This document shows, one piece after another, positions 5,679 through 60,644 of a stretch of 64,000 nt of DNA. Each line of letters starts with the position of its first letter. The first letter of the stretch is position 1. Source of the DNA: Macrostomum lignano (lineage: Eukaryota); contig NIVC01000296.1 in NCBI GenBank assembly GCA_002269645.1, forward strand, positions 639,015-703,014, given 5' to 3'. The translations under genes and the position numbers were made by a program. The notes under the pieces are model-generated. The model searched no databases and was not told the DNA's origin. It saw only the letters and a list, made by a program, of their open reading frames with translations.

Positions 5679-8600
5679 ATGCGAAATCCGGCTGCTGTCC
5701 TGCTGATCGTCAGTGTCCTGGCTGGGTCTGTGTGCTTAGTCAGCTCTGATGAAGCCAAACCTACCGAGTTCTATAGTGAGTATATGTAGTGAGTACTATA
5801 TACACACATATTTTGCAGCGCACGAAAATGTTGATTGAGTTTTGTCAATAACTACAACGATGAACAGGTCCCATCTATCGTACTGTAACACACTGATCGA
5901 ATAGTGACTACACAATCGTGCTGTACAATGTACACGCAAATCTAAAACCTTTGCGAACATCATATGTAGCAACAATTTTCTCATAATAATAATGCATTCT
6001 TTTATTTTGAGCTTGATGCAACTGACTCAGTCTTGGGGTGGTTTTGTATCTCACATCACGTAGGCGATCCAAGAGTTATGTGTAAGATTTTTATTGTCAT
6101 TGACTCATGGAGTTTAATATCTATACGCTTCATTGTCCCTATAATTGCAGCAGAAGCCGATAGCTGTGGCGAAATAGTGGCTACACGAACTGGTGGCTAT
6201 CTAACCTCTCACAAATATTTTAACCGCTGCACCTACCCGATCGACCTCAAATGCACCTGGAAGCTGGTCAGCGTCCCAGAGGTCAACGACACTCGATTGG
6301 ACTTCAGTTTCGACGCTTACGAGATGCCGAGAGAAAATCAGCCGTGCAACGACATCTACTTGAGGTTCCATGATGGACACCGCCCGACTGGGAAAGTGAG
6401 TACAGCTATGAACTTAAAACATGGTTTGTCCAATTTAAGGCAGGGGTTGCAGGACAAGGGGTTGTCCACCTTGAAAGAGTAGGGGTTGTTCACTCTAAAA
6501 CAGTGATGCAAGAATCTCAATTTAAGACAGTGTGGATGTCGTTTCAACATATTTTAACTAGCTTATTGTACTCCAGAGCAACGCAGTTACTCCCTTTAAA
6601 CTGAGCAGGTCATCAAGGCTCTGTGCGAAGGGCGCAAGATTCCTAAGCCGTTTCGGTCATTCAGCAACAAGGTGTTCGTGGAATTCAATAGCGGACGGTT
6701 CAGCGCCAGAGGCTTCTTATTAAAATGGCAGCGCGTTCGTAAGTTGTTGCAGATTCGTCTCTGCTTTGTAGCAGAGGGTCCGTAAGTTGTTGCAGATTCG
6801 TCTCTGCTTTGTAGCAGAGAGTCCGTACTCTGTTGCAGATTCGTCTCTGCTTTGTAGCAGAGAGTCCGTATTCTGTTGCAGATTCGTCTCTGCTTTGTAG
6901 CAGAGAGTCCGTATTCTGTTGCAGATTCGTCTCTGCTTTGTAGCAGAGGGTCCGTAAGTTGTTGCAGATTCGTCTCTGCTTTGTAGCAGAGAGTCCGTAC
7001 TCTGTTGCAGATTCGTCTCTGCTTTGTAGCAGAGAGTCCGTATTCTGTTGCAGATTCGTCTCTGCTTTGTAGCAGAGGGTCCGTAAGTTGTTGCAGACTC
7101 GTCTCTGCTTTGTAGCAGAGAGTCCGTACTCTGTTGCAGATTCGTCTCTGCTTTGTAGCAGAGAGTCCGTATTCTGTTGCAGATTCGTCTCTGCTTTGTA
7201 GCAGAGGGTCCGTAATCTGTTGCAGATTCGTCTCTGCTTTGTAGCAGAGGGTCCGTAATCTGTTGCAGATTCGTCTCTGCTTTGTAGCAGAGGGTCCGTA
7301 AGTTGTTGCAGATTCGTCTCTGCTTTGTAGCAGAGAGTCCGTACTCTGTTGCAGATTCGTCTCTGCTTTGTAGCAGAGAGTCCGTATTCTGTTGCAGATT
7401 CGTCTCTGCTTTGTAGCAGAGAGTCCGTATTCTGTTGCAGATTCGTCTCTGCTTTGTAGCAGAGAGTCCGTATTCTGTTGCAGATTCGTCTCTGCTTTGT
7501 AGCAGAGAGTCCGTATTCTGTTGCAGATTCGTCTCTGCTTTGTAGCAGAGAGTCCGTATTCTGTTGCAGATTCGTCTCTGCTTTGTAGCAGAGAGTCCGT
7601 ATTCTGTTGCAGATTCGTCTCTGCTTTGTAGCAGAGGGTCCGTAAGTTGTTGCAGATTCGTCTCTGCTTTGTAGCAGAGGGTCCGTAAGTTGTTGCAGAT
7701 TCGTCTCAGACCAGATGACTAAGATTGACTCAATTTTCGCGCATAATCTTGCAGGAGACTGCCGAAAAGACGACTTCACGTGCAGCAACGGCGAATGCGT
7801 CCCCAAGGAGTCTCGCTGCGACGGCGGCAAAGGAGAGCACTTGCGAGACTGCTCTGACGGCTCCGATGAGATTAACTGTGAGCTGCGTGTTGATGAGTCG
7901 CATTGATCTGAAACTGTCTAAAAGACTTATTTTGCACCCCATTCACCGGAAATTCGTACCAGGCCCCATCCTGACGCGCTGCCCAGCGGGAGAGCTGCTC
8001 TGCGGTCACAAGCTCCAGTGCTACAAAGCGGAGCACAAATGCGACGGCTCTAGTAACTGCCGAGACGGCTCTGACGAGCAAGGCTGTGAGATCCAAGCAT
8101 AAAAGGTTATAAAGCTACCACAAATATCAAATAATTAGTCATTTCTATCCATTGCTACTTACAAAATCGAGCAAAATTGTAAAAAAATGCCGGTGTATTG
8201 GAGTGATCGCTTTTGAGGATCGGCGCTAGCGTTTTGAGTTATATTGAGCATAGAAGTCGTCACTATGAGAGCCTTGGTGTCTGACTATTCGCCTTAGCGT
8301 TCATCTGTTAGTCTATAAAAATTATCCAAAGCATCACTACATCAACTGGTTCATGAGCAGGCAAGAACCTTCAGGCCTGCAGCGAGGGCAAGACGCTGTG
8401 CGGGCACCAGCACAGCTGCGTGTCCACCACAAAGGTCTGCGACGGAGTTTCCGACTGCAAGGACAACAGCGACGAGGCCAACTGTAAGAAGAGATTTGTT
8501 TGATAAAATATTTTTCAGTCTTTTTTATTGTAAGCAATTTCGCCCTTGGGGAACTTTCAATGTGGGATAGCCAGCTGGCGTCAGTTGTAACGATTATGCA

Positions 8601-9295
8601 AATATGAGTAAATGAAGAGGTCAGAGGTCAAGGAGGAGAAATCAATTTTCATGGGGCAAATAATGATCATTAAAGACCATACACATACCTTTTTTACTCA
8701 CTATGACTTCAGTCCATCCAACTCATCATATTAGTCATAGTTAGGAGGTTGTAGGTGGACTGATCGAGGTCGGGGTTTCGATTCTTGACCTACTCGAAGC
8801 AATCGAAGCAAGACACTTAACTCTGCATTGCTTTAGTTCACCAAGCTGTAAAATGGGTACCAGCATTAGCTGGGGTTTTTGAGTGTGTGTAGCGACCCCC
8901 CCTTAGTCCTTGGACTGAACAGCCGTTCGCAGCCTTCAGGATGCGCCGCGCAATAGCTGCGGCTGAGCTGTCGGTTGTACATCTGCCCACTAGGGCAGGT
9001 GTAATCAATTATTAATACTATTAGTATTTTAATTGTTATTATTATTACCATCGTAGTCCAGCAATAAATCAAATAATTTATCAATCCATCAATCCCGCAA
9101 TCAAATAAAAAATCAATGAATTGCACCCGATAGGCTCGAGCTCAACCGTGTGCTCGAGCAGCCAGTTCCAGTGCAGACGGCAGGGGATCTGCATTGACAA
9201 GGCCAAGCGCTGCGACATGCGCCAGGACTGCATGGACAACACGGACGAGGAGGACTGTAAGAAATAAGCCGAAAGACAGACACTAAGACAGAAAG

Positions 9296-9362
<67 letters not shown>

Positions 9363-9363
9363 C

Positions 9364-9445
<82 letters not shown>

Positions 9446-11082
9446 TTTGCACCACCCTGTTTGGTTGCCAGGCTTGTACATCACGGGCACAGGCCCGCCC
9501 TGCGCACTGAACTACATATGGTGCCCAAAGCGGGCGACATGCCTGAAGTCCACTCTGGCCTGCAACGGCATCGACGACTGCGGCGACAACTCCGACGAAG
9601 CCAATTGTGAGTTTTGGCTTTGAGTTGCTGCTTCAGCTGAAAGAGCTCTCGGGTAGATAACGCGTAAATTAAAAAATCAATGAATAAAAAAATTAGCCAG
9701 CGCATGCATAAACTGCTTCGCAGGTCCAGCTGGCATAGACGATGTCTGCACAATCAACTGGATCAGCTGCGGCAACCAGCAGTACATCAACCTGGCGAAG
9801 CGGTGCGAGCCGTCAGCCTGGTGTTTCGATGGCAGTCACACAGCATTGCCCAGCCAGTGTGAGCTGTTTGTACACCTGGGGTACACATGGGTAGACAGTT
9901 GGTCAATAACAAAGTACTCAGAAGAAGAAAACCAATTCCTAGGGGACGGGTCGCAGATCGGGAGTTGACGCGTCTCACTCACGACCCACGACCCCTGATT
10001 CGAATCCGGGCTTGTGTGCCGTTCTCGCCTGTCCAATACAGAGAGTGATACAGAGCATACAGAGAGTGATACAGAGGATACAGAGAGTGATACAGAGCAT
10101 ACAGAGAGTGATACAGAGGATACAGAGAGTGATACAGAGGATACAGAGAGTGATACAGAGGATACAGAGAGTGATGCAGAGGATACAGAGAGTGATACAG
10201 AGGATACAGAGAGTGATGCAGAAGATACAGAGAGTGATGCAGAGGATACAGAGAATGATACAGAGGATACAGAGAGTGATACAAAGGATACAGAGAGTGA
10301 TACAGAGGATACAGAGAGTGATACAGAGGACACAGAGAGTGATGCAGAGGATACAGAGAGTGATACAGAAGATACAGAGAGTGATACAGAGGATACAGAG
10401 AGTGATGCAGAGGATACAGAGAGTGATACAGAGGATACAGAGAGTGATACAGAGGATACAGAGAGTGATGCAGAGGATGCAGAGAGTGATACAGAGGATA
10501 CAGAGTGTGATACAGAGGATGCAGAGTGACACAGAGGATACAGAGTGTGATACAGAGGATACAGAGAGTGATACAAAGGATACAGAGAGTGATACAGAGG
10601 ATACAGAGAGTGATACAGAGGACACAGAGAGTGATACAGAGGATACAGAGAGTGATGCAGAGGATACAGAGAGTGATACAGAGGATACAGAGAGTGATGC
10701 AGAGGATACAGAGAGTGATACAGAGGATGCAGAGTGACACAGAGGATACAGAGTGTGATACAGAGGATACAGAGAGTGATACAGAGGATACAGAGTGTGA
10801 TACAGAGCATACAGAGAGTGATACAGAGGACCCAGAGAGTGATACAGAGGATACAGAGAGTGATACAGAGGATACAGAGAGTGATGCAGAGGATACAGAG
10901 AGTGATACAGAGGATGCAGAGTGACACAGAGGATACAGAGTGTGATACAGAGGATACAGAGAGTGATACAGAGGATACAGAGTGTGATACAGAGCATACA
11001 GAGAGTGATACAGAGGATACAAATTCAACCTAAGCCAACTCGTATTTTTTATTTTCACTTTTCAGGTGCGCCAACTTCTTGA
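5679..11082 (+). CDS. Secreted protein, signal peptide + CUB + six LDL-receptor class A repeats (about 409 aa). Exons 5679-5775, 6151-6395, 6609-6738, 7755-7877, 7963-8085, 8361-8483, 9134-9256, 9493-9606, 9724-9858 and 11066-11082.
   Basis: All introns are GT-AG and the exons total 1230 nt in frame. N-terminus [23 protein letters not shown] is hydrophobic. CUB motifs [19 protein letters not shown] and [17 protein letters not shown]. Phase-1 exons each encode a C..F.C..G.C..CDG..DC.D.SDE..C unit; the sixth is divergent. No transmembrane segment. Confidence 0.85.
6739..7706. repeat. 43-bp intronic tandem repeat starting exactly at the splice donor
   Basis: Unit gtaagttgttgcagattcgtctctgctttgtagcagagggtcc and variants, about 22 copies. 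Confidence 0.95.
8732..8998 (+). mobile_element. tRNA-derived SINE with a CORE-like central domain
   Basis: Degenerate A and B boxes (8732-8745, 8775-8786). They are followed by gcaagacacttaactctgcattgctttagttcaccaagctgtaaaatggg (8808-8857), which resembles the MIR/AFC CORE consensus gcaagtcacttaacctctctgtgcctcagtttcctcatctgtaaaatggg. Confidence 0.6.
9270..9445. repeat. (GACA)n microsatellite
   Basis: Directly visible in the intron between LDLa exons. Confidence 0.95.
9943..10030 (+). mobile_element. Possible decayed tRNA-like SINE head
   Basis: gtcgcagatcgg followed by B-box-like gattcgaatccggg at tRNA-like spacing. Confidence 0.35.
10037..11020. repeat. 21-bp intronic minisatellite (gatacagaggatacagagagt)
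   Basis: About 45 copies with periodic 19-bp variants. Source of many repeat ORFs. Confidence 0.95.
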
Positions 11083-11933
11083 TTCCAAAATTCTGGCTCA
11101 CTACGCTTTAACCCTAAAGATTAGGCTGATAATGCTTACAGAGATTCATTTATTCAAACAAACAATTGAAAGATTTAATTTATAACGCATGAAACATTGC
11201 TTTTTTTATGATCCATGTGATCGACTAAATTTCAATGCAGAATTCTGTAATTTTCTCTTTCGGTGCAAGTGTCACAACATTATTTAATATTTTCATACGA
11301 TTTTTACTTTGAATTAAAAGTGACATTCTGTCAGTAAAATTATCAGTAAAATTGCGTAATTTATCTTTATGAGTAGTATATTGAGTGTAAAGGTAGAACT
11401 GATAGCTCGTAATGTCTAAACTGTACATGAAAATCCGAGTGTTGAGTGCTAATAAATGCTGTCCATTATAACAGATTTAAACGCTAAAATATTATTTTTT
11501 ATTGCGTAACGAGCTGGAACGTTCGTTTTGTCAGCTTTGTGTCAGAGGGTCAGTTTGGTCAGAGCATCCTGAAGCATCCCTTGTCGTCCACCTGAAGCAT
11601 GGGCAGCTCAAGCGTCTGGCATAAGAACATGAGCTGGCTAGCCTCAAGGGCCTTGGGCGGTGCTTCTCCTTCCCTCTCTCTCGTCCCTCCCCGCTCTGAG
11701 TTTGGCTCACAAGACAGTCCCTTACTGCCAGACCCACCACGGCCAGACGGGTTTTGTAAAGTTAATAAACCATCAGCAAGGCCATCAGTCAGTTACCACC
11801 GGCCGGGCGTCAGCCTCTGCCGCAAAAAACCAATTGTAAGTGCGTTGTACCGTCTTCTGTCATTCGTTTGCCAGGGCGGGGGGGAATTGAAGGTCCGAGT
11901 GTGACCTGTCCTTTCCTAAAGTACGTTCGTAAC

Positions 11934-12336
11934 AGACAGCACTGTGTGTTAGCAAGGCATCAAACTCAATAATTAACAGACAGCATTCTGTGTCAGCAAG
12001 GCATCAAACTCAATAATTAACAGACAGCATTCTGTGTCAGCAAGGCATCAAACTCAATAATTAACAGACAGCATTCTGTGTCAGCAAGGCATCAAACTCA
12101 ATAATTAACAGACAGCATTCTGTGTCAGCAGGGCATCAAACTCAATAATTAACAGACAGCATTCTGTGTTAGCAAGGCATCAAACTCAATAATTAACAGA
12201 CAGCATTCTGTGTTAGCAAGGCATCAAACTCAATAATTAACAGACAGCATTCTGTGTCAGCAAGGCATCAAACTCAATAATTAACAGACAGCATTCTGTG
12301 TCAGCAAGGCATCAAACTCAATAATTAACAGACAGC
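11934..12336. repeat. 44-bp tandem repeat, left part of an array interrupted by a LINE
   Basis: Unit ttaacagacagcattctgtgtcagcaaggcatcaaactcaataa, about 9 copies. The array resumes at 15402-15562. Confidence 0.95.
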
Positions 12337-15300
12337 TTTGACTCAGCTGCAGGGTGGTCCGTAGACAGCGGGGAGGCGAGGGTCGCCCATTCCGCTAGCC
12401 CCTGAAGGCCCGCAGACAGGCAGAGGCGTGGGGCCGGTCAGGGTGGTCCGCCGGTCCGTCCTGCAGCGTGATCTTGCGTGGGGAAGAAAGTGGCTCGTCT
12501 TGTCGCCCGAAGGAACTGGATGAGCCGTGGGGTGCTGTCGGGCTGGCAGACCTCGTCAATGGACGGGTTCGGCTCGAGGTAGCGTAGCCAGTCTCTGGTA
12601 AAGAAAGGGCAGTGACAAACAAAGTGCTGAGCATCTTCATTGTCGTACTCGCAAAAAGGGTAAAGTTCACTTTCGAGGTCGCCTCGGAGGAAGCGTTGCC
12701 TGGCGAGGTAGCCATGACCGGTAAAGGTAATGACGAGGGCTCGGATATCCTTCCGATTTTGGTTCAGAAGGACGTTTCTGAGCCTGTGAGAGGGGCACGG
12801 AACCCCGGCACGAGATTGCCGGCAGTTTTGGGTGCCCGCCCATCTGTCTCTGTGGAGGGAGTCAGCCCAGTCATCGTTCTGACGATTGATGACTGTCGAA
12901 GGGATAGGGACCAGGGGAGCAGGGCCAAAGCAAGAGCCAGAGCCGCCCCTCTTGGCGAGGGTGTCTGCCAGCTCGTTCCCCGGAAACCCTGCGTGCCCTG
13001 GGATCCACTTCAGCCTGACAGTATTGCTACTGGCCAGGAGGTTGAGCTGCCGGACGCAGTCGGCGACTGTCCGGGAGTTCGTTGTGGTGTGGCACAGGGC
13101 CTGTAAGGCCGCTTGGCTATCAGAGTGGATGACAATAGTCTCTCCTGCAGCGCAGGAGCTGATGGCAAGGACTTCGTTCTGGAAGACTGTGGAGAGTCTG
13201 CGAGTGCGCTGGGCATGCGTGGCAATGACGCGGCCGTTGATGATGATGCAGACCCCAAAGCCGGAATGGCCGTCTTTGATGGATCCGTCCGTGTAGCAAT
13301 GGACCTCCTGGAAATTCCAGTGGTCATTAGCAGCATCCCTAGAGGGGATGGTGACCTTGTAGCGCTGAAAGAGGTTGAGAGTGCGGGGTTCGCCGTCAGG
13401 TAAGACGTGGAGCCCGCCGCTTTCTCTCAAGTCTTTTAGGCAGAGATCGGCGTGAGGCAGGAGCTTGCGCTTAGCCATGGCCCTATGGAGCAGGATACGA
13501 ATGCCAGAGTCAATCAGACGGCGGGCAGTCTTGGCCGCTTCCCTGCGAACGAAGATGTCCAGCGGGGGAATGTTGAGGAAGGCGTTGAGGCCATCGTAAG
13601 GAGCAGACGGGGGGCGCTCATGATCATGCGGCATGCGCACCCTTGCGCTCTCCTGAGAGCCTCCAGGCAGGTCTTCATCTGTAGGGCGCTAGCCCAGATC
13701 AGGCCGCCATACGAGATAGCAGGCCTAACCATTGCAGTGTAGATCCACCAGAAGCGCTTGGGGGTGAGCCCCCAGGTGGTGCCGACAACCCTGCGCAGTT
13801 GCACGAGGACTGCGAGGGCCCTCTTGGCTTTTGCTTAAACGTGGGGTGACCAGTTCAGCCTGTGGTCCAGGGTAATACCCAGACATTTAGTCTGCTTGCA
13901 GAAGGGGATTTCCCTTCCGTAAAGCGTGAGCAGCCGAATCTGCCACTTGGTCCTGCTGGTGAACATGATCGCTGCGGTCTTAGTCTCAGAGAGCTTTAGA
14001 CCACAGCGATCCGCCCATTGCTCAGCGGCATAGATAAAATTCTGAAGAAGGTCCCTGAGGGTGTCATGGGACGGACCAGATGCCACCGCGGTGACATCGT
14101 CCGCATATCCTACTTTCAGAATGGGGTCAGGCCTTGCGGGAAGTGGCGTGGTGCAGGAGCCCGTTGACTTCGAGGTCAGGGTGCAGCTTTAGCAGGATCT
14201 GCCTAAGCTGATCTCCGGACTTAATGGCACTGCCGGCCGGGATCCAGACGCGAAAGCGCTGGGTCTTTTGTCGCTCGCCCTCACTGGCGAAGACGAGCTT
14301 GCCGAGCTTCTTGGGCCAGTTCAACTTTGGCAGAAGCTCGCGTAGACTGCGGCTGCTCTCCTCCGAGTTGCACCATCTGAAGATGCAGCCGTCGGTCTTG
14401 GCAGATTTGACCACGCTCACAGGGCGGCCTGCCTGGAGCTGGTCAATGAGCGCAATGGTGCGCCAGGCACTGTCGAGCTCGTCAGCCGTGAGGTCTTGCT
14501 CTTCACCGAAGACGATGACCGCCGGTTGGAGCTTGACCTTTGAGGCGTAGTTGTTGACGGCGGTTCCCGAAGGCCCTGCCGCGCTGGTAGCAGGTTTACT
14601 GGGTGGCTCACCAGCGGGGGTTGTATCCTAAGGGGCAGGGGTTGCTGTGGTTCCTTTCGGCCCAACAGCAGCCTCGCCCTCCCTAGGTTCCCCCTCCGCC
14701 GGTGGCCGGCCCGCAGTACCCCGTAGTCGCCGTCGCCGCTCGTTGCGGCGCTGGTTGCGGGCACGTCGGGCCTCCGCGGAGGGCCCGGGTGCGCGTGCGG
14801 GCATGTCACCGGACGAGCCGGCGGCGGCCCATCTGCCCCCGGTGGGGCGGCGCTGGCGCCAGAGTCACCGGCCGGAGTTGCCGGGGTCCCGGCTTCAGCG
14901 GGATTTTTAGAGGCGGAGGATGCCATAGCTGAAAGCGGGAAGGAGTGAGCTGAGTCACAAAAGAAAGGGTGAAAAAGAAAAAGAAAAGGACCACTAGCGA
15001 CCGGACAACCCCCCGGCCTTCCAGCCCATCGGCACGGTCAACACCTTAGGCATTAAGGGGTACATTAAGCAGTACCACGGCCTGCAGGCTGGCAAGCCAG
15101 ACCCGCATACCCAAATTCGGCCGAAGCCACTGGATGGGTCGCCAGCGTCGGAGCCCAGTCTGTCCAGCAGCCCTAGGGTCTGCCTTGAACACACGCGGGG
15201 ACGAGTACCCCTGGGTCGACTTGCGAGACAGCGTGGGGGGGGGGTGGGGGTCTGCGGCTGCCAGCGGCAAATAGAGGGTGCAGACCTCCCACCAGCCTTT

Positions 15301-15401
15301 ACCTGCTGAAGATGGGGGCAGGCGTGAGGCATCGCAGACCGTAGCCCATAGGCCTGGTCTGTCTCATACTTCACAGGCGTGCTGAATACACCTTCGCGTG
15401 C
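12337..15401 (-). mobile_element. LOA-clade (I group) non-LTR retrotransposon, internally deleted and with frameshifts. It retains the 5' UTR, ORF1 remnants, the C-terminal half of RT and RNase H.
   Basis: RT motif KVGYADDV near 14090-14115. LOA-like TWGLTPKRFWWIYTAMVRPAISYG. RNase H CYTDGS..VFQNEVLAI..IHSDSQAAL..WIPGHAGFPGNELADTLAK. The 13-bp direct repeat attaacagacagc at 12324-12336 and 15402-15414 is consistent with a TSD. ORF1 abuts YADD, so the APE domain and RT N-terminus are missing. Confidence 0.85.
15154..15401 (-). ncRNA. Putative HDV-like self-cleaving ribozyme at the LINE 5' end
   Basis: Hand fold: P1 GCACGCG/CGCGUGU with a G1-U wobble; P2 CCCAG/CUGGG; P3 GGG/CCC around L3 UACUCGU; P1.1 AC/GU; P4 hairpin at 15188-15163; J4/2 CAGA with the putative catalytic C at 15162; J1/2 of 179 nt. 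G1 coincides with the TSD-defined element boundary. Confidence 0.8.
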
Positions 15402-15562
15402 ATTAACAGACAGCATTCTGTGTCAGCAAGGCATCAAACTCAATAATTAACAGACAGCATTCTGTGTCAGCAAGGCATCAAACTCAATAATTAACAGACA
15501 GCATTCTGTGTCAGCAAGGCATCAAACTCAATAATTAACAGACAGCATTCTGTGTCAGCAAG
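15402..15562. repeat. 44-bp tandem repeat, right part
   Basis: Same unit as 11934-12336, about 3.5 copies. Confidence 0.95.
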
Positions 15563-16857: not shown

Positions 16858-18206
16858 TCAAGTTGCAGTTCATCCGCACCTCTGCACTGCTCAAGCTCAT
16901 GCTGAAGCGCCTCTGGTTCCGGCTGCGTCGGCGCGACGGAAATTCTCGCCGATTATCCACGGCGTCATTTTGTCGACCTCTCCGGAATCGCAGCAACCAG
17001 AAAGCCGGCAAGGGCGAAGATGCCAAGGACGTCGATCCGGCTTTGGAGACTGAAGTGGATGATGAGGGAAAACCGGGTAGCCAGCCGCTGCCGCACCCCG
17101 CCTATCAGCCAATGCGAGTCGAGCCCGTGCTGGAGCTGCCAGTGCACTACTGGTTCCACGTCTACCTGCACAGCTACGACAGCGACCGGCTGCTCACCCC
17201 GTTTGTCAGATCAATGATGGAGGACTTTCCTACAGACAGGCGCCTGCTCAGCATCATGAATAGGTGTCTGGTGAGCGTTGCCTCTGATAACAAGAATTGC
17301 GATAAAACACTCAGCATCCTCAGACATCAGTCAGAATCTCCAAAAACTACTCAGCATCTCCACAAATGACTCAGAATATCCACACATCACTCAGCATCTC
17401 CACAAACCACTCAGAATCTCCAAAAACTACTCAGAATCTCCACAAATCACTCAGCATTTCCACAAATCATTTAGCATCCCCAGAAGTCACTCAGCATCTC
17501 CACAAATCATTCAGCATTCCTAGAAATCACTCAGCATCTCCACAAATCATTCAGCATTCCTAGAAATCACTCAGAATCCCCACAAATCATTCAGCATCCC
17601 AGAAATCACTCAGCATTCCCAGAAATCACTCAGCATTCCCAGAAATCACTCAGCATTCCCAGAAATCAATCAGCATTCCCAGAAATCACTCAGCATCCCC
17701 AGAAATCACTCAGCATTCCCAGAAATCACTCAGCATTCCCAGAAATCACTCAGCATCCCCAGAAATCACTCAGCATCCCCAGAAATCACTCAGCATCCCC
17801 AGAAATCACTCAGCATCCCCAGAAATCACTCAGCATCCCCAGAAATCACTCAGCATCCCCAGAAATCACTCAGCATCCCCAGAAATCACTCAGCATCCCC
17901 AGAAATCACTCAGCATCCCCAGAAATCACTCAGCACTCACACCCATCAACTTGAGTTTATTGCTCACTGCTTCAGGTGAGAGTGTCCCTGGGACAGCTGG
18001 AGATGTACAAATCGCTACCACGCTACGTATTCATTCTAAACGGAGCCAACTGGGACTCAATAATTGGTGCCCTGGTCGAGATGGAGGCGGCCTTCCCCGA
18101 GCTGTTGCGGTTCGCCAGTCACCCGCTGCTGGTGGACACTCCGACGCAGCGGTTCTCGACGTCATACTGGCGCCAGACGGCCTTGCAGACTCGCATGACG
18201 AGATGA
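16858..18206 (+). CDS. Last two coding exons (16858-17270, 17976-18206) of an unidentified gene. Upstream exons are unresolved; 15828-15958 is a candidate.
   Basis: Acceptor ttctttaaccag, donor ctg/gtgagc and acceptor tgcttcag join in phase 0. The translation is complex and protein-like (ELPVHYWFHVYLHSYDSDRLL...YVFILNGANWDSIIGALVEMEAAFPELL) and ends in TGA. No family recognised. Confidence 0.55.
17300..17935. repeat. 20-bp intronic minisatellite (cagaaatcactcagcatccc)
   Basis: Degenerate on the left, homogeneous on the right. Confidence 0.9.
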
Positions 18207-18724: not shown

Positions 18725-21700
18725 TGTTGAAAAAGCAATGTAAATTGTATCTATGCTAATTATAGTAACTCGTTAGATTCCCCAAGTCTTAGAACTTTCT
18801 AGAACGATACTGTATAAGTTTGTCTATGCCTAAAACTAAAGCTATTAAATCAGCCTCTGGCTTCATCCTCTCTTAACTTTTCCCTTTTGCTCGTTGACTA
18901 AGAAATATACTCGATCAGCTACACTACTGCGTTTGAAAAGCCAACAGGTTATGGGCCCAGCACGCTTCCACTGCGCATAAGTGGTAGCTGATTCAGAGGC
19001 CTCGCTCAGACGGAAAATAGGCTTGTTCTCGACACGAACTTTCCGAAGAAATGGCGGATGATAAGTTTCAAGTCGACAAGCTGGGAAGCGGAAACTGGAC
19101 TACCTGGAAGATCCAGATTAAGTTCTGTCTTATAGCGAGGAAGCTCTGGGGAGTCGTCGACGGTTCTGTAATTCTCGCAGAGGATGCCACTCAGGAGCAA
19201 GAAAACGATTTTCGAGAGCAGCAACAGAGAGCTGCTGCAGTGATCGTTCTTTCAATCAAGAAAGAGTTAATCTATCTAATAACTTCGTGTGGCGAAGATC
19301 CACATCGTATGTGGCAAGCTCTCCAACAGCACTTCGAACGAGAATCAACTGCGAATAAGATCTATTTGAAGAAACAGCTTTTCCGGCTGCAGATGAGTGA
19401 AGGGACCCGCGTACAGGATCATATACGCCATATGAAGGAGCTGACCGACAAACTAGCCTCTATCAACGCACCCGTCAGTGAAGAGGACCAAGTGGTCATG
19501 CTGCTCAGCAGCCTGCCTGAGAGCTACTCTACCTTGGTTACTGCCTTGGAAGCTCGCGGTGATGATCTTACACTGCAGATGGTTCACCAAGCACTCATCA
19601 ACGAGGAGCAAAAGCGGAGTGAATTAAGTGAGCGAGGGTCTGGTGGTACACAGGGTGGAGAGTCTGCACTGAAGACCCAAAAAGGCCAAGGTCTGCCACG
19701 TCGTGCTATCAAATGTTTTAATTGCGGAAAGATGGGTCACTTTGCCCGAGACTGTCGTTCAGGAGGAGCGAAAAAGTTCGTCAAGGACCAAGGACCTGCA
19801 CGGTATGTCGCCAAAACAGCCGATGGTGCCGCGACCCGGGACATCGCTGAAACCTCGCTTGATGACTACGGACCTAAAAGTAGCTGCAACGAGACATTCT
19901 TTGTGTCGCCCGCGAAGACCAGCTCTGACATATCCACCTGGATAATTGACTCTGGAGCGTCCTGCCACATGACATACTCTAGAGAGCTACTAGTCAACTA
20001 TAAGCAGTTTGGACGACCTGAACGGGTCAGCCTAGGTGATGGTCGAACAGTCGAGGCCTGCGGCAGTGGTCAGGTAAAACTCATTATGCTCCTGCCACAT
20101 GGCAAGCGTTTCAAGACAGCTGTAACAGATGTACTTCTAGTGCCTCAGCTGTCGTGCAATCTGTTTAGTGTTCGAGCAGCAGCAGCAAAGGATAAAGTGA
20201 TACAGTTCGGTCACTCTAAATGCTGGATTCGCAACAAGGATGGACTCCTTGTTGGAAAGGGATCTGTTGTTAACAGAATGTACCAGCTTGACTGTGAAGT
20301 AAAATTGCCGGCGAACACTGCGGCAGTAGCAAATTCTGATTCACCAGACACAAGTGCAACTTTATGGCACCAGCGCCTTGGTCATGTCAATGAACACCAG
20401 CTAAATCAAATGAGCAAAGACCAACTCGTGAGTGGCATCCCCAAGTTGCAGACTGCATGTGTAGACTTCTGTGAAGGATGTATCGAGGGCAAAATGCACT
20501 GCAAGCCTCATAGGTCGATTTCCGAAATCCGCTCTACCGAAAGGCTACAACTAATTCACAGCGACATATGCGGTCCTATGCAAACAGAGTCATTTGGTGG
20601 AAACAAGTACTTCGTCACCTTTATTGATGACTACTCACGCTGCGTTAAGGTTTTCTTCATGCGACAAAGGTCAGAAGTGCTTGATAAGTTTAAGAAGTTT
20701 GAGGCCATGGTTACAACAGAAACAGGACTCAATATCAAAGCACTGCGAACTGACGGCGGCGGAGAGTATGCATCAAGCCAATTTACAAAATTCCTGGAGC
20801 AGAAGGGCATTCGGCATGAGACTACCGTGGCTCATACACCTCAGCAAAATGGCGTTGCTGAACGGATGAATCGCACTCTCGTTGAATCAGCCCGCACAAT
20901 GATGGCCCATGCTGGAGTAAGCAACCAGTTCTGGGCAGAAGCAGTAAACACCGCAGCTTATGTGCGAAATAGAGTCGTGACGACTGCTCTTACTCCGCAA
21001 ATGACGCCGTACCAGCGTTGGTATGGGCGCAAACCTAACGTTGGGCACTTTCGTGTTTTCGGCTGCGTAGCCTATGCCCACATACCAGATGTGAAGCGAA
21101 AGAAGCTAGACAAGAAGGCCGAAAAGCTACGGTTCGTTGGCTACAATACGGATGGAAGAAGCTACAGACTGTTTGATGAAAGGTTGAGAAAGACAGTCAT
21201 CCGCTACGATGTGGTGTTCAACGAGACTGATTTTGGAACCTCAAAGAATAGAGCAAGAGACAAGGACGCGAGCTGGTTCAACTTGGAACTTGATGAGCCC
21301 AATATGACAGAAGAGACACCAGGTCAAGAACAGGAACAGTCGACAGAAACTGATCAGAAGCGATATCCTCAACGTGAAAGGAGAGCCCCTGACCGTCTCA
21401 AATATGAAGGTGCAAAAGTGGCATCTGAAACCGAACACTTTGCGTTCAGAATGACCGAAATTGTCGAACCGAAAACGATCGACGAAGCCATGAAAGGTGA
21501 CTATGCGAAGCAGTGGAAAGCTGCCGCTGACTCAGAATATAATTCTTTGATGGAGAATGAAACCTGGGATCTGGTACGACTACCTGAAGGACGCAAGGCA
21601 ATCGGATGTAAATGGATCTTCAAGGTCAAGTATGACGGTGATGGCAAGGTAGATCGTTTTAAGGGAAGACTTGTTGCCAAGGGCTATTCACAAAAGTTCG

Positions 21701-23330
21701 GCATTGATTATGAAGAGACTTTCGCGCCAGTTGTAAAATTCCCATCAGTTCGTGCAATGTTGGCATTAGCGGCTAAACATGGATTACACGTTCACCAGAT
21801 GGACGTTGTAACTGCCTTTTTGAACGGCGAATTGTGCGAAGAAATTTACATGGAGCAGCCACCCGGTTTCGTCAAGCCAGGAGAGGAAGAGCTGGTCTGC
21901 AAGTTAAAGAAGTCGCTTTATGGACTTAAGCAAGCGCCCCGCTGTTGGAACAAAGCCTTTTGCGACTACCTAGCCAGAATTAACTTCGAGGAAAGCTCAG
22001 CCGACAGCTGTGTCTTCATTAGGAAAAGGGAGGATCTCACGGCCCTAGCTGTGTACGTTGACGACCTAATACTAATTGTGAAGAGTCTGGTGGAAATGCA
22101 ACAAATCAAGGATGAACTTTCCAAAAGGTTCAAGATGAAAGACATGGGCGAGTTGCACTACTGTCTAGGTGTCAACATCCAAGCAAACAAGGAGGACCGC
22201 TGTATCAAGCTTAATCAGAAGCAGTACATAACCAAACTGCTTGAACGCTATGGACTTGCAGAGGCGAACCCAGCCTTAACTCCGATGGATCCCAACGTAA
22301 AACTAGCCAAATACGACGAGGGCAGCAAGCCAGTTGACTCTACAGTTTACCAGTCAATGGTTGGAAGCTTGCTCTATGCAGCAACTGCTACACGTCCAGA
22401 CATCTCGTATGCAGTGGGAGTTGTCTCCAAGTTCAACAACAAACCACGAGAAATACATCTAACCGCAGTAAAACGCATCTTCCGATACCTAAAGGGAACA
22501 ATCGACTTTGGCCTAGAGTACAAATCTAGTGTAGAGAACTTGATCGGCTATTCTGATGCAGACTGGGCGAGTGACGTAGATGATCGACATTCCACCTCTG
22601 GCATCGTGTTTAAGCTATCTGGTGGCGCTATCAGCTGGCTTAGCAAGAAGCAATCAACTGTCTCACTCTCGACAACGGAAGCTGAGTACGTTGCGCTGAG
22701 CTCTGCAGCACAAGAAGCCATGTGGCTACGGCGGCTACTAAGTGATCTTGAAAGATCAGGATCTGAGCGACCCACTGTGATCTACGAGGACAACCAAGGA
22801 ACCATTGCTCTTTCTGAGAATTCTGCTGGAAGTCGACGGACAAAGCACATTGATATCAGACATCACTTCATTCGTGAAGCCGTCAGCAATGGGACTATTC
22901 GGGTGGTCTACTGTCCAACTGGCGATATGGTTGCAGATGCGCTTACTAAGCCGTTACCGAAGGACAAGTTCATGCAACTGCGAACAATGCTTGGAGTTGT
23001 TAAAATGTAACAGAGGAGTTTGAATTTACTGACATCTTAATCAGAATTTTGTGAAGACTGGACAAATTTTTGTAACCGCATAGATAGACAATTTTCATTA
23101 AGTGGGAGTGTTGAAAAAGTAATGTAAATTGTATCTATGCTAATTATAGTAACTCGTTAGATTCCCCAAGTCTTAGAACTTTCTAGAACGATACTGTATA
23201 AGTTTGTCTATGCCTAAAACTAAAGCTATTAAATCAGCCTCTGGCTTCATCCTCTCTTAACTTTTCCCTTTTGCTCGTTGACTAAGAAATATACTCGATC
23301 AGCTACACTACTGCGTTTGAAAAGCCAACA
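18725..23330 (+). mobile_element. Full-length Ty1/Copia LTR retrotransposon
   Basis: 222-bp TG...CA LTRs at 18725-18946 and 23109-23330 with one mismatch seen. 5-bp TSD GACCC. PBS GGTTATGGGCCCAG at 18947-18960. Polypurine tract just before the 3' LTR. Confidence 0.97.
19051..23010 (+). CDS. Copia gag-pol polyprotein (gag, CCHC knuckle, protease, integrase, RT, RNase H), 1319 aa, uninterrupted
   Basis: CFNCGKMGHFARDC, WIIDSGASCHM, GAG-pre-integrase WHQRLGH, integrase HSDICGP...QQNGVAERMNR, RT YVDDL and RNase H YSDADWA. Integrase precedes RT, as in Copia. Confidence 0.97.
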   Translation: MADDKFQVDKLGSGNWTTWKIQIKFCLIARKLWGVVDGSVILAEDATQEQENDFREQQQRAAAVIVLSIKKELIYLITSCGEDPHRMWQALQQHFERESTANKIYLKKQLFRLQMSEGTRVQDHIRHMKELTDKLASINAPVSEEDQVVMLLSSLPESYSTLVTALEARGDDLTLQMVHQALINEEQKRSELSERGSGGTQGGESALKTQKGQGLPRRAIKCFNCGKMGHFARDCRSGGAKKFVKDQGPARYVAKTADGAATRDIAETSLDDYGPKSSCNETFFVSPAKTSSDISTWIIDSGASCHMTYSRELLVNYKQFGRPERVSLGDGRTVEACGSGQVKLIMLLPHGKRFKTAVTDVLLVPQLSCNLFSVRAAAAKDKVIQFGHSKCWIRNKDGLLVGKGSVVNRMYQLDCEVKLPANTAAVANSDSPDTSATLWHQRLGHVNEHQLNQMSKDQLVSGIPKLQTACVDFCEGCIEGKMHCKPHRSISEIRSTERLQLIHSDICGPMQTESFGGNKYFVTFIDDYSRCVKVFFMRQRSEVLDKFKKFEAMVTTETGLNIKALRTDGGGEYASSQFTKFLEQKGIRHETTVAHTPQQNGVAERMNRTLVESARTMMAHAGVSNQFWAEAVNTAAYVRNRVVTTALTPQMTPYQRWYGRKPNVGHFRVFGCVAYAHIPDVKRKKLDKKAEKLRFVGYNTDGRSYRLFDERLRKTVIRYDVVFNETDFGTSKNRARDKDASWFNLELDEPNMTEETPGQEQEQSTETDQKRYPQRERRAPDRLKYEGAKVASETEHFAFRMTEIVEPKTIDEAMKGDYAKQWKAAADSEYNSLMENETWDLVRLPEGRKAIGCKWIFKVKYDGDGKVDRFKGRLVAKGYSQKFGIDYEETFAPVVKFPSVRAMLALAAKHGLHVHQMDVVTAFLNGELCEEIYMEQPPGFVKPGEEELVCKLKKSLYGLKQAPRCWNKAFCDYLARINFEESSADSCVFIRKREDLTALAVYVDDLILIVKSLVEMQQIKDELSKRFKMKDMGELHYCLGVNIQANKEDRCIKLNQKQYITKLLERYGLAEANPALTPMDPNVKLAKYDEGSKPVDSTVYQSMVGSLLYAATATRPDISYAVGVVSKFNNKPREIHLTAVKRIFRYLKGTIDFGLEYKSSVENLIGYSDADWASDVDDRHSTSGIVFKLSGGAISWLSKKQSTVSLSTTEAEYVALSSAAQEAMWLRRLLSDLERSGSERPTVIYEDNQGTIALSENSAGSRRTKHIDIRHHFIREAVSNGTIRVVYCPTGDMVADALTKPLPKDKFMQLRTMLGVVKM

Positions 23331-24192: not shown

Positions 24193-24773
24193 GTTGAGAT
24201 GTCAAGGCTCACGAGCGGGGATTGTGGATATGTCAAGGCTCACGGGGCGGAATAGCTGAGATTTCAAGGCGTATACAAGGGGAATTGCTGAGGTTATTGC
24301 AAGAAGAAGCTACATGTAGTTTATTCAAAAATTTGTATTCCATTCTTTGTTGGCTCCCCAACGGGGGACGCTGATGGCTAGTACAAGGTACTATATCTAA
24401 TATGATCCAAGAAGTATATAGCTTAGGGCTTGATCAATTTTTACGCTTTTTACTGTACATACAGTTTGTCATTGTTTGTACTTTTTTATGCATTGTACGC
24501 GCCCTGTTTTCGCGCAGTCTAGTTCAACCGTTTTTTTACTACCAATTCTCTTTCCAAACACCCATGGACGAGCGATAGTGTACGCGCTTTGTACCTGGTA
24601 CCTTGTACAGTAATTCTATATTTAATTACATAGCCCAAGCAGCATGCTTTACAGTCACAACAGTTTGTGTGTAATGAGAGACGTACAATATTAGGAAAGG
24701 CTATAACATTATGCCAACCCACAACTAGTCGAGCTAATATACTCGGATCGGCTTAAGTTTGGCCGAAGTTGCA

Positions 24774-56390: not shown

Positions 56391-57368
56391 TGTTGTCGCT
56401 TTCAGAGAGTTAGCACTGAAAGAACTGATCTGACACTGCCTCCCATTGTGAACTGTTACTCTTAACTCAACCTTGCCTTGTTGTTTTCTCTTCAGAATAA
56501 TTTGCCCAGCTGCAAACTGTGATGGTGCATATCTCGTACTCGCGATTAAAAAATCTTATACTTCTTACTGTTTCACTGATTTAATTCCGAACCAACCAGG
56601 AAAACAAATTTATTTTTAATTCCGTGCATTTTTCTTGTGCTTTACTTTTACTGATCGGTGTTAGTGCTATTTATTGTGTGTAATATTATCGAAAAATTCA
56701 ATTTCCGATGTCATTATTTAGGAACTTCCGCTGTGCTGTATTAAAACTATATAGTACTTCCGCATGCACTGACGTAGCATTGCGCCAATAATTTTACATT
56801 GCGTGACGCAGGCGCCTAAACCAATCTTTTGTTGAATGCTACTAGCATAATAATCCTTTGAAATACATTGTATTGCTATACTGCATTGCTTTTGATGATC
56901 TAAACGAGACTAGCTAGACTCCTCACTGATCCATACGAGTATGCTCCTCAGTCCTCAAGCGAACTACGAGTATATGGAAACGAGAGCAGATTGAGCTAGC
57001 AGCAAACTTAGTATTTGATCTTCGGATCACGGATAGAATCAAGAAAATGTAGATCTGGCACTTATTCAAAAGTCCTTGATTTAATGGAATACAGCAATTT
57101 TCAATCTGTCACTTTTTCAACTTCAACTTTTTTAAATTTGGATTGGCGCAAGTCTCCTTTACATCGTCAAAAGCAATACTGGTTCCAATCCAAGAGAATG
57201 ATTTGTTGATAACTGTATTTCACTCTTTGAGCTGAACGCTGTGTTTGACCATTATTTTGTTGGTGTACAGCGTGCAACAGATCGCATGAATTGGTAAATT
57301 TCCTTTCATGCGCTCCTTTCATCCTATAATTCTGGTAGGGGGCGCTGCTGTTGCAAAGAGCGGCGGTG

Positions 57369-60300: not shown

Positions 60301-60399
60301 GCGGCAGATAGCGGAGCTGTTACAGGAGCTGCGGCAGGCGGAGCTGTTGCAGGAGCTGCGGCAGATAGCGGAGCTGTTACAGGAGCTGCGGCAGATAGC
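57369..60399. repeat. 30-bp tandem array (gcagatagcggagctgttgcaggagctgcg), about 100 copies
   Basis: Almost invariant; variants appear only toward the inner end. Confidence 0.97.
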
Positions 60400-60644
60400 A
60401 GATTTACTCGTATCCCAAAAATATTCGCCTTTAAAATTGCATACAGTGTTTGAAAAAATCAATTGTGGAGTTTTAGATGCTTGAATCAATTTTGCTTAAG
60501 CCAGTGGCGTTTGCCGTACATGCCGTTCAATCTTTTTGTACATAAGGCCAAGCATAATTCTCAAATGGTAGATTTATCGCTTGGTTTCAAGTGCGTTAAG
60601 TCCTGTCACGAGTGCGCATAGCCGAGCATAGCTGAGAACAACAT

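What the first reader, a model, noticed from the sequence alone, without database searches (positions are those of the whole stretch)
15154..15401. HDV-like ribozyme with a 179-nt structured J1/2 defines the LINE 5' end
Seen on the minus strand: a complete nested double pseudoknot. P1 is 7 bp with a G-U wobble at position 1; P2 is 5 bp; P3 is 3 bp; L3 is UACUCGU; P4 is a hairpin; J4/2 is CAGA. P1.1 is an unusual A-U/C-G pair set instead of YC/GG. The predicted cleavage G (15401) is exactly the first base inside the 13-bp TSD, an independent coincidence. J1/2 is itself folded (gagacag/ctgtctc closing helix and ggtgggaggtctgc/gcagacccccacc). Known: HDV-like ribozymes process the 5' ends of R2, RTE, L1Tc and some other LINEs. 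Inference: this is a flatworm LOA-clade example whose large insertion would evade length-limited motif searches.
Basis: partly seen in the sequence, partly recalled or inferred. Interest (0 to 1): 0.85.

Follow-up and report, generated by a model that had tools for sequence, protein, structure and literature searches.

The report
HDV-like ribozyme at LINE 5' end
The first 255 bases of a broken flatworm-type LINE retrotransposon fold into a hepatitis-delta-like self-cleaving RNA with a large conserved inserted domain; it is a well-supported new example of a known way for such elements to cut their own 5' end.

Summary
Observation confirmed.

G15401 is the first base of a 3065-bp LINE copy. That copy is bounded by a perfect 13-bp target-site duplication inside a 44-bp satellite.

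The motif fits the published RNArobo HDV descriptor after three relaxations:
- L3 position 2 is A.
- Contiguous P2 is 5 bp.
- J1/2 is 179 nt.

It is the only hit in the window. Chance gives about 0.03-0.4 hits per window and about 1e-6 per fixed position.

The decisive evidence is comparative. I recovered three related 5' ends through ORF1 homologues (81%, about 34% and about 34% identical). They keep the fold with compensatory changes in P1, P1.1, P2, extended P2 and the J1/2 domain. One contig starts exactly at G1 of its own P1.

The nearest named relatives are Macrostomum lignano proteins, so "flatworm" is indirectly supported. "LOA clade" was not tested.

Long and structured J1/2 regions are already known in R2 and drz-Agam-2 ribozymes. 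This is a new member of a known kind. Self-cleavage itself is untested.

The parts
15402..15414 (-). 5' copy of the 13-bp target-site duplication GCTGTCTGTTAAT, inside the 44-bp satellite
12337..15401 (-). The whole LINE insertion, 3065 bp. It is internally deleted and degenerate.
   Evidence: The duplication fixes the boundaries and empty-site periodicity is restored. It lacks 2544 nt relative to L012.
15395..15401 (-). P1 5' strand GCACGCG. Predicted cleavage is immediately 5' of G15401.
   Evidence: Covaries with L013 at two pairs, A-U to C-G and C-G to U-A.
15216..15394 (-). J1/2, 179 nt: a conserved multi-helix peripheral domain of the P1.2 type
   Evidence: Folds. The same architecture is seen in L013. 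Helices are 75-100% paired across relatives, with both-side changes.
15381..15391 (-). 5' strand of the J1/2 closing helix (element positions 11-13 and 18-21). It contains part of the second GCACGC copy (15382-15377).
   Evidence: helices 2 and 3, with three both-side changes
15223..15232 (-). 3' strand of the J1/2 closing helix (element positions 170-173 and 177-179)
15324..15374 (-). Conserved J1/2 hairpin (element positions 28-78).
   Evidence: helix 5: 19 pairs, 100% paired, 2 both-side changes. 85% identity to L013.
15243..15293 (-). Long J1/2 hairpin, GGUGGGAGGUCUGC with GCAGACCCCCACC
   Evidence: Equivalent hairpins occur in L011, L013 and L014.
15217..15220 (-). Extended P2, 5' strand GUCG
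   Evidence: Covaries: GCCG/CGGC in L011 and L013.
15211..15215 (-). P2 5' strand CCCAG
15208..15210 (-). P3 5' strand GGG
   Evidence: Invariant in all four sequences.
15201..15207 (-). L3 UACUCGU. U15207 and G15202 sit at the positions of the reverse-wobble U and G. C15205 and A15206 form P1.1.
   Evidence: Role of the U.G pair: PMC4836649.
15198..15200 (-). P3 3' strand CCC
15191..15197 (-). P1 3' strand CGCGUGU
15189..15190 (-). J1/4 GU, the partners of P1.1
   Evidence: both P1.1 pairs change on both sides in L013
15163..15188 (-). P4 hairpin: UC/GA, then GGCAG(A)CC with GGCUGCU
   Evidence: L011 has a perfect 8-bp version and L013 an 11-bp stem.
15159..15162 (-). J4/2 CAGA. C15162 is the candidate catalytic cytosine.
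   Evidence: The C is invariant in four sequences and the rest varies.
15154..15158 (-). P2 3' strand CUGGG
15147..15150 (-). Extended P2, 3' strand CGAC
14127..14926 (-). ORF1 remnant. ATG at 14926, then a frameshift, an in-frame TAG at 14630-14628, and truncation by the internal deletion near 14132.
   Evidence: 81% identical to P0085 and 53% to an M. lignano protein.
12438..14131 (-). ORF2 remnant: RT from just before YADD (14107) onward, RNase H and a C-terminal CCHC-like motif. It has one in-frame stop and one frameshift.
12324..12336 (-). 3' copy of the target-site duplication

Best explanation
Window 15401-15147 (minus strand) is an HDV-like self-cleaving ribozyme at the extreme 5' end of an RNase H-bearing non-LTR retrotransposon of a lineage found in macrostomid flatworms.

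Inferred mechanism:
1. The element is transcribed as part of a longer read-through transcript.
2. P1 (5' end) pairs across a folded 179-nt peripheral domain with the strand just 3' of P3/L3.
3. P2 with its extension, P3, P1.1 and P4 complete the nested double pseudoknot.
4. C15162 in J4/2 and a Mg2+ ion bound at the L3 U.G pair catalyse cleavage 5' of G15401.
5. The released RNA begins at G1 and serves as mRNA and as the template for target-primed reverse transcription. A full-length cDNA therefore ends at G1. That is why the insertion's 5' junction coincides with the first base of P1.
6. The J1/2 domain has very short linkers (AAG and AA) and sits next to an extended P2. It probably 'pinches' P1 and P2 together, as shown for drz-Agam-2-1.

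This copy is a dead, internally deleted insertion.

What is shown: the helices, the insertion boundary, the rarity of the motif, and conservation with covariation in relatives.

What is inferred: catalysis, the role of J1/2, and co-transcription.
For: - All helices and junctions are present.
- The published descriptor is matched except for three relaxations. Each has precedent in natural ribozymes: P2 at least 5 bp, P1 and P1' 23 to over 700 nt apart, and few conserved nucleotides (PMC3774820).
- It is the only hit in the window. Chance gives about 1e-6 per fixed position. Real-sequence controls gave 0 hits in 158 kb plus 300 kb.
- The duplication puts the insertion's first base at G1 of P1.
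- The 5' segment really belongs to the LINE. An ORF1 homologue follows it, and L011, L013 and L014 show the same 5'UTR-ORF1-ORF2 order.
- Comparative test: the structure was derived from the window alone. It is 88.6% paired over three sequences, against 35-46% when partners are slid.
- 18 pairs change on both sides, against 1-5 when slid: P1 2, P1.1 2, P2 2, extended P2 1 and the J1/2 closing helix 3.
- A manual parse of four sequences shows P3, L3 positions U1, C5, G6 and U7, and the C of J4/2 all invariant.
- The L013 contig starts exactly at G1 of GCCUGC, which pairs with its GCAGGC.
- With the catalytic strands held open, the nested remainder folds as P2ext, P2, P3 and P4. Nested energy plus P1 is about equal to the unconstrained minimum energy.
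Against: - No cleavage assay has been done.
- Only three relatives were found, and only one of them includes the P1 5' strand.
- J4/2 departs from CNRA in L011 (CGUG) and L013 (CUGC).
- Rfam models do not match, even on the 3' core alone.
- L3 position 2 is A in this copy. That lies outside the published descriptor, although it makes a Watson-Crick P1.1 pair.
- A second GCACGC at +20 could form a 6-bp alternative P1.
- This copy is degenerate, so its own ribozyme may carry disabling changes, for example a bulged P4 and a P2 one pair shorter than in relatives.
- More distant relatives (L002, L003) show no motif upstream of ORF1.
Confidence: 0.85

Rival explanations
1. A conserved, structured 5' UTR that has HDV-like topology but does not cleave, for example an internal promoter, a protein-binding platform or a translation element. 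In this reading the 5' end at G15401 is set by transcription initiation.
For: - Conservation and covariation prove structure, not catalysis.
- J4/2 is not canonical in two relatives.
- There is no Rfam hit.
- Some LINE 5' ends combine a promoter with a ribozyme, as in L1Tc Pr77 (PMC3383444, abstract).
Against: - The conserved positions are exactly those that define the HDV active site: the first P1 pair G.U or G-C, L3 U...CGU, a P1.1 that covaries, and a C four nucleotides before P2'.
- A 6-7-bp long-range P1 starting at nucleotide 1, with two compensatory changes, has no obvious role in a promoter.
Confidence: 0.08
2. The family has a working ribozyme, but this particular copy is a catalytically impaired relic. 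This concerns the copy only and is compatible with the main explanation for the family.
For: - The copy has a 2.5-kb internal deletion, a frameshift and stop codons.
- Relative to L011, its P4 has lost a base, giving a bulge and a G.U pair.
- Its P2 is one pair shorter than in relatives.
- L3 position 2 is A where relatives have U or C.
Against: - P1 is perfect at 7 bp.
- J4/2 is canonical CAGA.
- P1.1 has two Watson-Crick pairs.
- All invariant positions are intact.
- The 13/13 duplication and near-identical flanking repeats suggest the insertion is not very old.
Confidence: 0.2
3. A chance match: a GC-rich 5' UTR that happens to satisfy a loose motif.
For: With the loosest descriptor, Markov sequence gives up to about 10 hits per Mb, or about 1 per window.
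Against: - It coincides exactly with the boundary set by the duplication.
- It is the sole hit in the window, and decoys gave no hits.
- The fold is conserved with compensatory changes in three independent relatives.
Confidence: 0.01

Closest known systems
R2 retrotransposon HDV-like ribozymes, especially silkmoth and honeybee R2
   Same: - A nested double pseudoknot at the 5' end of a non-LTR element.
- P1 and P1' are separated by a long J1/2. Silkmoth loops are 216-498 nt, and P1 and P1' are over 700 nt apart in honeybee.
- P3, L3 and P1.1 are the conserved block.
- P2 is at least 5 bp and P4 is variable.
- In silkmoth, J1/2 is needed for activity (PMC3774820).
   Different: - R2 is specific to the 28S rDNA site and has a single ORF. 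It often cleaves upstream, at -28 in the 28S sequence.
- Here the host element has two ORFs and an RNase H domain and is not in rDNA. Cleavage is predicted at the element's first base.
- Here the J1/2 fold is itself conserved with covariation. Silkmoth J1/2 loops share only small regions of identity.
drz-Agam-2-1, a 'large' HDV-like ribozyme with a P1.2 domain and extended P2
   Same: A structured J1/2 domain joined by very short linkers, plus an extended P2. This is the 'pinch' architecture shown to speed cleavage by almost 1000-fold (PMC4908430).
   Different: - Agam-2 has a single P1.2 helix and a 12-bp P2.
- Here the domain is a multi-branch junction of about 160-180 nt with three hairpins, and P2 is 5+4 bp with an internal loop.
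- No kinetic data exist for this one.
Baggins, R4, Dong and L1Tc ribozymes, which cleave at the element's own 5' end
   Same: Cleavage lies precisely at the first nucleotide of the retrotransposon, so full-length insertions start at G1 (PMC3774820). From my own knowledge, Baggins is an RNase H-bearing LINE classed in the LOA clade.
   Different: - Different host phyla (arthropods, nematodes, trypanosomes) and compact ribozymes.
- No sequence homology was shown.
- The clade relationship to this element was not tested.
CPEB3 and sea-urchin (S. purpuratus) HDV-like ribozymes
   Same: - The core is almost superimposable: L3 is UUCACGU there and UACUCGU here.
- J1/4 is GU in both.
- J4/2 is CGAA, CUGA or CUAA there and CAGA here.
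- P3 is 3 bp and P1 begins with a G.U pair.
   Different: - Those have a 1-2-nt J1/2 and a U.U mismatch in P1.1.
- Here J1/2 is 179 nt, and the A at L3 position 2 turns that mismatch into an A-U pair.
R2 SIDEs (short internally deleted elements)
   Same: A 5' ribozyme joined to the 3' end of a LINE after an internal deletion. This is the minimal RNA needed for trans-mobilisation (PMC3414825).
   Different: Only one copy was seen here. It is not known whether the deletion came before the insertion.
Twister-variant ribozymes of Schistosoma mansoni non-LTR retrotransposons
   Same: Flatworm LINEs that use a self-cleaving ribozyme (PMC8501958, abstract).
   Different: A different ribozyme class (twister) and a different flatworm group.

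Membership tests
HDV-like self-cleaving ribozymes | Nested double-pseudoknot order: P1-J1/2-P2-P3-L3-P3'-P1'-J1/4-P4-J4/2-P2' | tested here: met
   The same order is seen in L011, L013 and L014.
HDV-like self-cleaving ribozymes | P1 of 6-7 bp starting with G paired to Y, with the cleavage site at its first nucleotide | tested here: met
   G15401.U15191 and 7 bp. L013 has G1-C and 6 bp. Two compensatory pairs.
HDV-like self-cleaving ribozymes | 3-bp Watson-Crick P3 closing a 7-8-nt L3 that matches UYYHCG(N)Y | tested here: inconclusive
   P3 is met. L3 UACUCGU matches 6 of 7 positions (A instead of Y at position 2; descriptor). Relatives are canonical: UUCUCGU, UCUCCGU, UUCCCGU. The U and G at the positions of the metal-binding reverse wobble are present.
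HDV-like self-cleaving ribozymes | P1.1 between L3 positions 2-3 and J1/4 | tested here: met
   C15205-G15190 and A15206-U15189. L013 has U-A and C-G, a change on both sides at both pairs.
HDV-like self-cleaving ribozymes | Catalytic C in a J4/2 of form CNRA immediately 5' of P2' | tested here: met
   CAGA with C15162. The C is invariant in four sequences. L011 (CGUG) and L013 (CUGC) depart from NRA.
HDV-like self-cleaving ribozymes | P2 of at least 5-6 bp | tested here: met
   5 contiguous bp plus 4 more after an internal loop. The published descriptor asks for 6. Natural R2 ribozymes have at least 5. It covaries.
HDV-like self-cleaving ribozymes | Match to curated covariance models (Rfam HDV, CPEB3 and drz families) | tested here: not met
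   No hit at E <= 10, even on the 86-nt 3' core. This is a detection criterion, not a defining property. The family has only about 5-6 conserved nucleotides.
HDV-like self-cleaving ribozymes | Mg2+-dependent site-specific self-scission abolished by a C-to-U change in J4/2 | not testable with these tools
   Needs an in vitro assay.
Ribozyme-terminated non-LTR retrotransposons | The ribozyme sits at the element's 5' terminus, upstream of ORF1, and full-length insertions begin at the cleavage site | tested here: met
   The duplication-defined first base is G1. The ORF1 homologue starts 475 nt downstream. The L013 contig starts at G1.
LOA clade of LINEs | Phylogenetic placement of the RT within LOA; APE-RT-RNase H ORF2 | not tested
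   RNase H is present. L013's ORF2 has APE, RT and RNase H. No clade reference sequences were available, and in this copy the RT upstream of motif C is deleted.
Flatworm (Platyhelminthes) origin | Closest named relatives of the element's proteins are flatworm sequences | tested here: met
   M. lignano A0A1I8FVG9 is 67% identical to the ORF2 C-terminus and 53% to ORF1. Ten further M. lignano proteins match. This is indirect, because the source organism of the window itself is unknown.

The most novel reading that the evidence does not exclude
The 160-180-nt J1/2 region is not a passive insertion. It would be a conserved multi-helix domain: a closing helix, three hairpins and 2-4-nt linkers. That would define a distinct structural subclass of large HDV-like ribozymes in macrostomid flatworm LINEs. 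It would be required for catalysis, or would couple cleavage to something else such as ORF1 translation, protein binding, or a choice between alternative P1 strands.
Probability: 0.3. Interest if true: 0.6.

Novelty: new member of a known kind. Interest (0 to 1): 0.45.

Why it matters
- It adds a flatworm, non-R2, two-ORF LINE lineage to the retrotransposons that appear to make their own 5' ends with an HDV-like ribozyme.
- Standard tools miss such cases. Rfam and the published descriptor with J1/2 capped at 50 nt both fail here. LINE boundaries plus comparative folding recover them.
- The conserved, covarying J1/2 domain is a natural test case for the 'pinch' model of peripheral-domain activation.
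- In practice, the ribozyme marks the true 5' end of this family when annotating repeat-rich Macrostomum-like genomes. In M. lignano gene models, these LINE ORFs are currently fused into host proteins.

Tried and rejected
- **Rfam.** Searched at gathering threshold on the whole window, and at E <= 10 on 15100-15450 and on the 3' core alone. No HDV-type hit.
- **Self-BLAST of the window.** No second copy.
- **The search for homologous proteins.**
  - With ORF1: nothing. This was a sensitivity miss, later overturned.
  - With the ORF2 C-terminus: best hit 54% identical, on a short contig.
  - With the Mab-21-like ORF, to identify the organism: nothing.
- **Exact look-ups of window ORFs.** All absent from the collection.
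- **Metagenome scan** with the 20-mer core. One hit, a chance match inside a GC-rich bacterial coding region.
- **Genome contigs protein scan.** Nothing.
- **Distant ORF2 relatives** (L002-L010, about 30% identical). No HDV motif, and most lack 5' ends.
- **Custom covariance model** from published sea-urchin ribozymes. Abandoned because MAFFT misaligned P4, J4/2 and P2'.
- **Four-way MAFFT alignment of the 3' core.** Also shifted by one column in L3, so I parsed the four sequences by hand instead.
Rejected as the J1/2 closure.
- **'P4 closed hairpin' as an extra chance filter.** Dropped because the candidate itself fails my simple test.
- **ORF1 against Pfam DUF4780 and against L002 ORF1.** No detectable match. 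One M. lignano relative is, however, named DUF4780.
Full report
**1. What is at the site**

- P1 GCACGCG/CGCGUGU, 7 bp, opening with a G.U pair
- a 179-nt J1/2
- P2 CCCAG/CUGGG
- P3 GGG/CCC
- L3 UACUCGU
- J1/4 GU
- a P4 hairpin
- J4/2 CAGA

A script parse reproduces this. It also shows that P2 continues after a 1x3 internal loop as GUCG/CGAC (15220-15217 with 15150-15147). The duplex energy is -11.4 kcal/mol, against -6.7 for the 5-bp core.

I then held the P1 strands, L3, J1/4 and J4/2 single-stranded. ViennaRNA folds the remainder exactly as P2ext+P2, P3 and P4, plus a folded J1/2. That nested energy (-92.4) plus P1 (about -10.4) is about equal to the unconstrained minimum energy of -103.9.

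**2. The insertion boundary**

The element sits inside a 44-bp tandem repeat, at 11930-12336 and 15402-15562. GCTGTCTGTTAAT flanks it on both sides. Deleting the element plus one copy restores uninterrupted 44-bp periodicity.

The insertion is therefore 15401-12337 (3065 bp), and its first base is G1 of P1.

This is not an ordinary 5'-truncated copy. After a 475-nt leader comes an ORF1 remnant. Its ATG is at 14926, followed by one frameshift and an in-frame TAG at 14630. Then comes an internal deletion, and then ORF2 from just before the YADD box through RNase H. Compared with the intact relative L012, 2544 nt are missing.

**3. Is the motif more than chance?**

I took the published RNArobo HDV descriptors from the supplement of PMC4870747:
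- P1 GNNNNN*:NNNNNY
- J1/2 up to 50 nt
- P2 at least 6 bp
- P3 of 3 Watson-Crick pairs
- L3 TYYHCG*Y
- J1/4 RN
- J4/2 CNRA*

The candidate needs three relaxations: A at L3 position 2, a 5-bp contiguous P2, and a 179-nt J1/2.

Results from my re-implementation:

| Test set | Result |
|---|---|
| Window, both strands, loosest settings | Candidate is the only hit |
| 79 kb of other LINE loci | 0 hits |
| 300 kb of reversed or complemented decoys | 0 hits |
| Markov sequence, only the needed relaxations | 0.25-0.5 hits per Mb |
| Markov sequence, any one L3 mismatch | 2-3 hits per Mb |
| Markov sequence, loosest settings | 7-10 hits per Mb |

Only about one in eight chance hits has a two-pair P1.1. 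Chance therefore gives about 0.03-0.4 hits per window (up to about 1 under the loosest descriptor), and about 1e-6 at one pre-specified base.

Rfam finds nothing, even on the 3' core alone. That is expected for a family with only five or six conserved nucleotides and a 179-nt insertion.

**4. Relatives and covariation**

Early searches found no family copies.

A phmmer search of cluster representatives with the ORF1 C-terminal domain did find relatives:
- an 81%-identical protein on JGI contig L011. Logan contig L012 is the same element at 99.9% identity.
- about 34%-identical proteins on Logan contigs L013 and L014.
- a dozen Macrostomum lignano UniRef proteins.

All three new 5' regions carry the same core. 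In the table below, "n/a" means the contig is cut inside J1/2, so the P1 5' strand is missing.

| Sequence | P2 | Extended P2 | L3 | J1/4 | J4/2 | P1 |
|---|---|---|---|---|---|---|
| Window | CCCAG/CUGGG | GUCG/CGAC | UACUCGU | GU | CAGA | GCACGCG/CGCGUGU |
| L011 | CCCAAA/UUUGGG | GCCG/CGGC | UUCUCGU | GU | CGUG | n/a |
| L013 | CUCAGA/UCUGAG | GCCG/CGGC | UCUCCGU | AG | CUGC | GCCUGC/GCAGGC |
| L014 | CCUCAGA/UCUGAGG | GUCG/CGGC | UUCCCGU | GU | CUGA | n/a |

P3 is GGG/CCC in all four.

L013 is complete at its 5' end. The contig begins with GCCUGC, the exact complement of the GCAGGC that follows its P3.

Relative to the window:
- P1 changes A-U to C-G and C-G to U-A.
- P1.1 changes A-U/C-G to C-G/U-A.

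I then counted the window-derived structure, including both pseudoknots, on the three-way alignment:
- 88.6% of cells are paired, against 35-46% when partners are slid by 1-3 columns.
- 18 pairs change on both sides, against 1-5 when slid.
- No shuffle out of 500 reaches the observed values.
- By helix, the both-side changes are P1 2, P1.1 2, P2 2, extended P2 1 and the J1/2 closing helix 3.
- The 19-pair J1/2 hairpin is 100% paired.

L013 folds into the same overall architecture. A 4-nt linker is followed by a 9-bp closing helix around three hairpins, then AA, then extended P2.

**5.

- The gagacag/ctgtctc helix is not in the minimum-energy fold (+2.4 kcal/mol). It is also not maintained in L013.
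- GAGACAG belongs to the conserved hairpin at element positions 28-78.
- CUGUCUC belongs to the closing helix that pairs with element positions 11-21. That leaves linkers of only 3 and 2 nt.
- A second GCACGC at 15382-15377 could form a 6-bp alternative P1. It is not conserved in L013 and lies in the closing helix.
- The 'unusual' P1.1 is best seen as follows. CPEB3, L011 and L014 have one G-C pair plus a U.U mismatch. The window's A turns the mismatch into an A-U pair.

**6. Mechanism**

The most likely mechanism is the one established for R2, R4, Dong, Baggins and L1Tc (PMC3774820):
1. The element is co-transcribed with upstream sequence.
2. The ribozyme cleaves itself 5' of G1.
3. The RNA that now starts at G1 is used for translation and for target-primed reverse transcription.
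4. Full-length insertions therefore start at G1.

[quoted passage not shown] In silkmoth R2, removing the long J1/2 abolishes cleavage.

Catalysis, the role of J1/2 and co-transcription are inferences here.

One caveat remains. J4/2 fits CNRA in the window and in L014 but not in L011 or L013, and only the C is invariant. Silkmoth R2 likewise conserves only the catalytic C and one A in that region.

**7. Organism and clade**

The window's own genome is not in the searchable collections.

The best named relative is M. lignano A0A1I8FVG9. It is 67% identical to the ORF2 C-terminus and 53% to ORF1. All other named ORF1 relatives are also from M. lignano, a macrostomorph platyhelminth. One of them is annotated as DUF4780-containing. 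'Flatworm' is therefore indirectly supported.

LOA-clade membership could not be tested, because no clade references were available and most of the RT is deleted in this copy.

**8. Novelty**

The following are all published:
- HDV-like ribozymes at LINE 5' ends
- P1 and P1' lying 23 to over 700 nt apart, and J1/2 loops of hundreds of nucleotides
- structured P1.2 domains
- internally deleted ribozyme-bearing derivatives, the R2 SIDEs (PMC3414825)

A full-text search for Macrostomum plus ribozyme found nothing relevant. For Schistosoma LINEs, only twister variants have been reported (PMC8501958).

This is therefore a new, well-supported member of a known kind. Its mildly distinctive feature is a J1/2 domain whose fold is itself conserved.

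Noticed in passing
window 19051-23010 (+): An uninterrupted 1319-aa Ty1/copia-type polyprotein ORF. It has gag, a zinc knuckle, a protease-like barrel, integrase and RVT_2 (Pfam). It may be a young LTR retrotransposon.
   Followed up: partly
window 31602-34907 (+): A Gypsy/Ty3-like element: a gag-like ORF (390 aa, no Pfam hit) followed by a pol ORF with RVT_1, RNase H and integrase. The pol ORF ends inside the integrase.
   Followed up: partly
window 38172-43730 (-): A Helitron-like element in pieces: Helitron_like_N, PIF1 helicase, the Pif1 2B domain and a UvrD C-terminal domain. There is also an upstream 189-aa ORF with no Pfam hit.
   Followed up: partly
window 24759-28951 (+): Two long intronless ankyrin-repeat ORFs, followed by a 489-aa ORF with a Mab-21 C-terminal domain. 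The last has no homologue in the 5.8-billion-protein search.
   Followed up: partly
window 11930-12336 and 15402-15562: A 44-bp satellite, 98-100% identical between units, split by the LINE insertion.
   Followed up: yes
window 9274-9445; 10036-11021; 17304-17935; 57319-60489; 62485-63708: Several further tandem arrays: an AGAC microsatellite, 21-bp and 20-bp minisatellites, and kilobase-scale arrays near the 3' end of the window that create very long spurious ORFs.
   Followed up: no
window 8000-8100 (+): The end of ORF 7725-8102 reads like an LDL-receptor class A module (CxxxxxCDGxxDCxDGSDE). It may be a host exon. This was read by eye only.
   Followed up: no
window 15377-15382 (-): A second copy of GCACGC lies 19 nt downstream of the first. 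It could pair with the P1 3' strand as a 6-bp alternative. It is not conserved in L013.
   Followed up: partly
L013 1-6 and 5930-6492: This Logan contig starts exactly at G1 of the ribozyme, yet runs about 560 nt beyond the element's 3' end (...GUCAAA). It could be a read-through transcript beginning at the cleavage site, or an assembly break at the repeat boundary.
   Followed up: partly
L011 143-146; L013 228-231: J4/2 is CGUG in L011 and CUGC in L013, not CNRA. Both elements nevertheless have long open ORFs.
   Followed up: partly
proteins P0086, P0089, P0091-P0101 (Macrostomum lignano UniRef): ORF1 and ORF2 of this LINE lineage are embedded in very long M. lignano gene models. These carry names such as protocadherin-16-like, fibrinogen C-terminal domain and protein kinase domain. 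The likely cause is annotation that fused transposon ORFs to host genes.
   Followed up: no
L001 3989-4010: A 22-nt exact match to the ribozyme core (P3-L3-P3'-P1') lies inside a GC-rich, apparently bacterial coding region. There is no flanking similarity, so it is a chance hit.
   Followed up: yes
tool behaviour: The word-indexed protein search returned nothing for ORF1. Full phmmer on cluster representatives found an 81%-identical relative. Negative results from the indexed search should not be taken as absence.
   Followed up: yes
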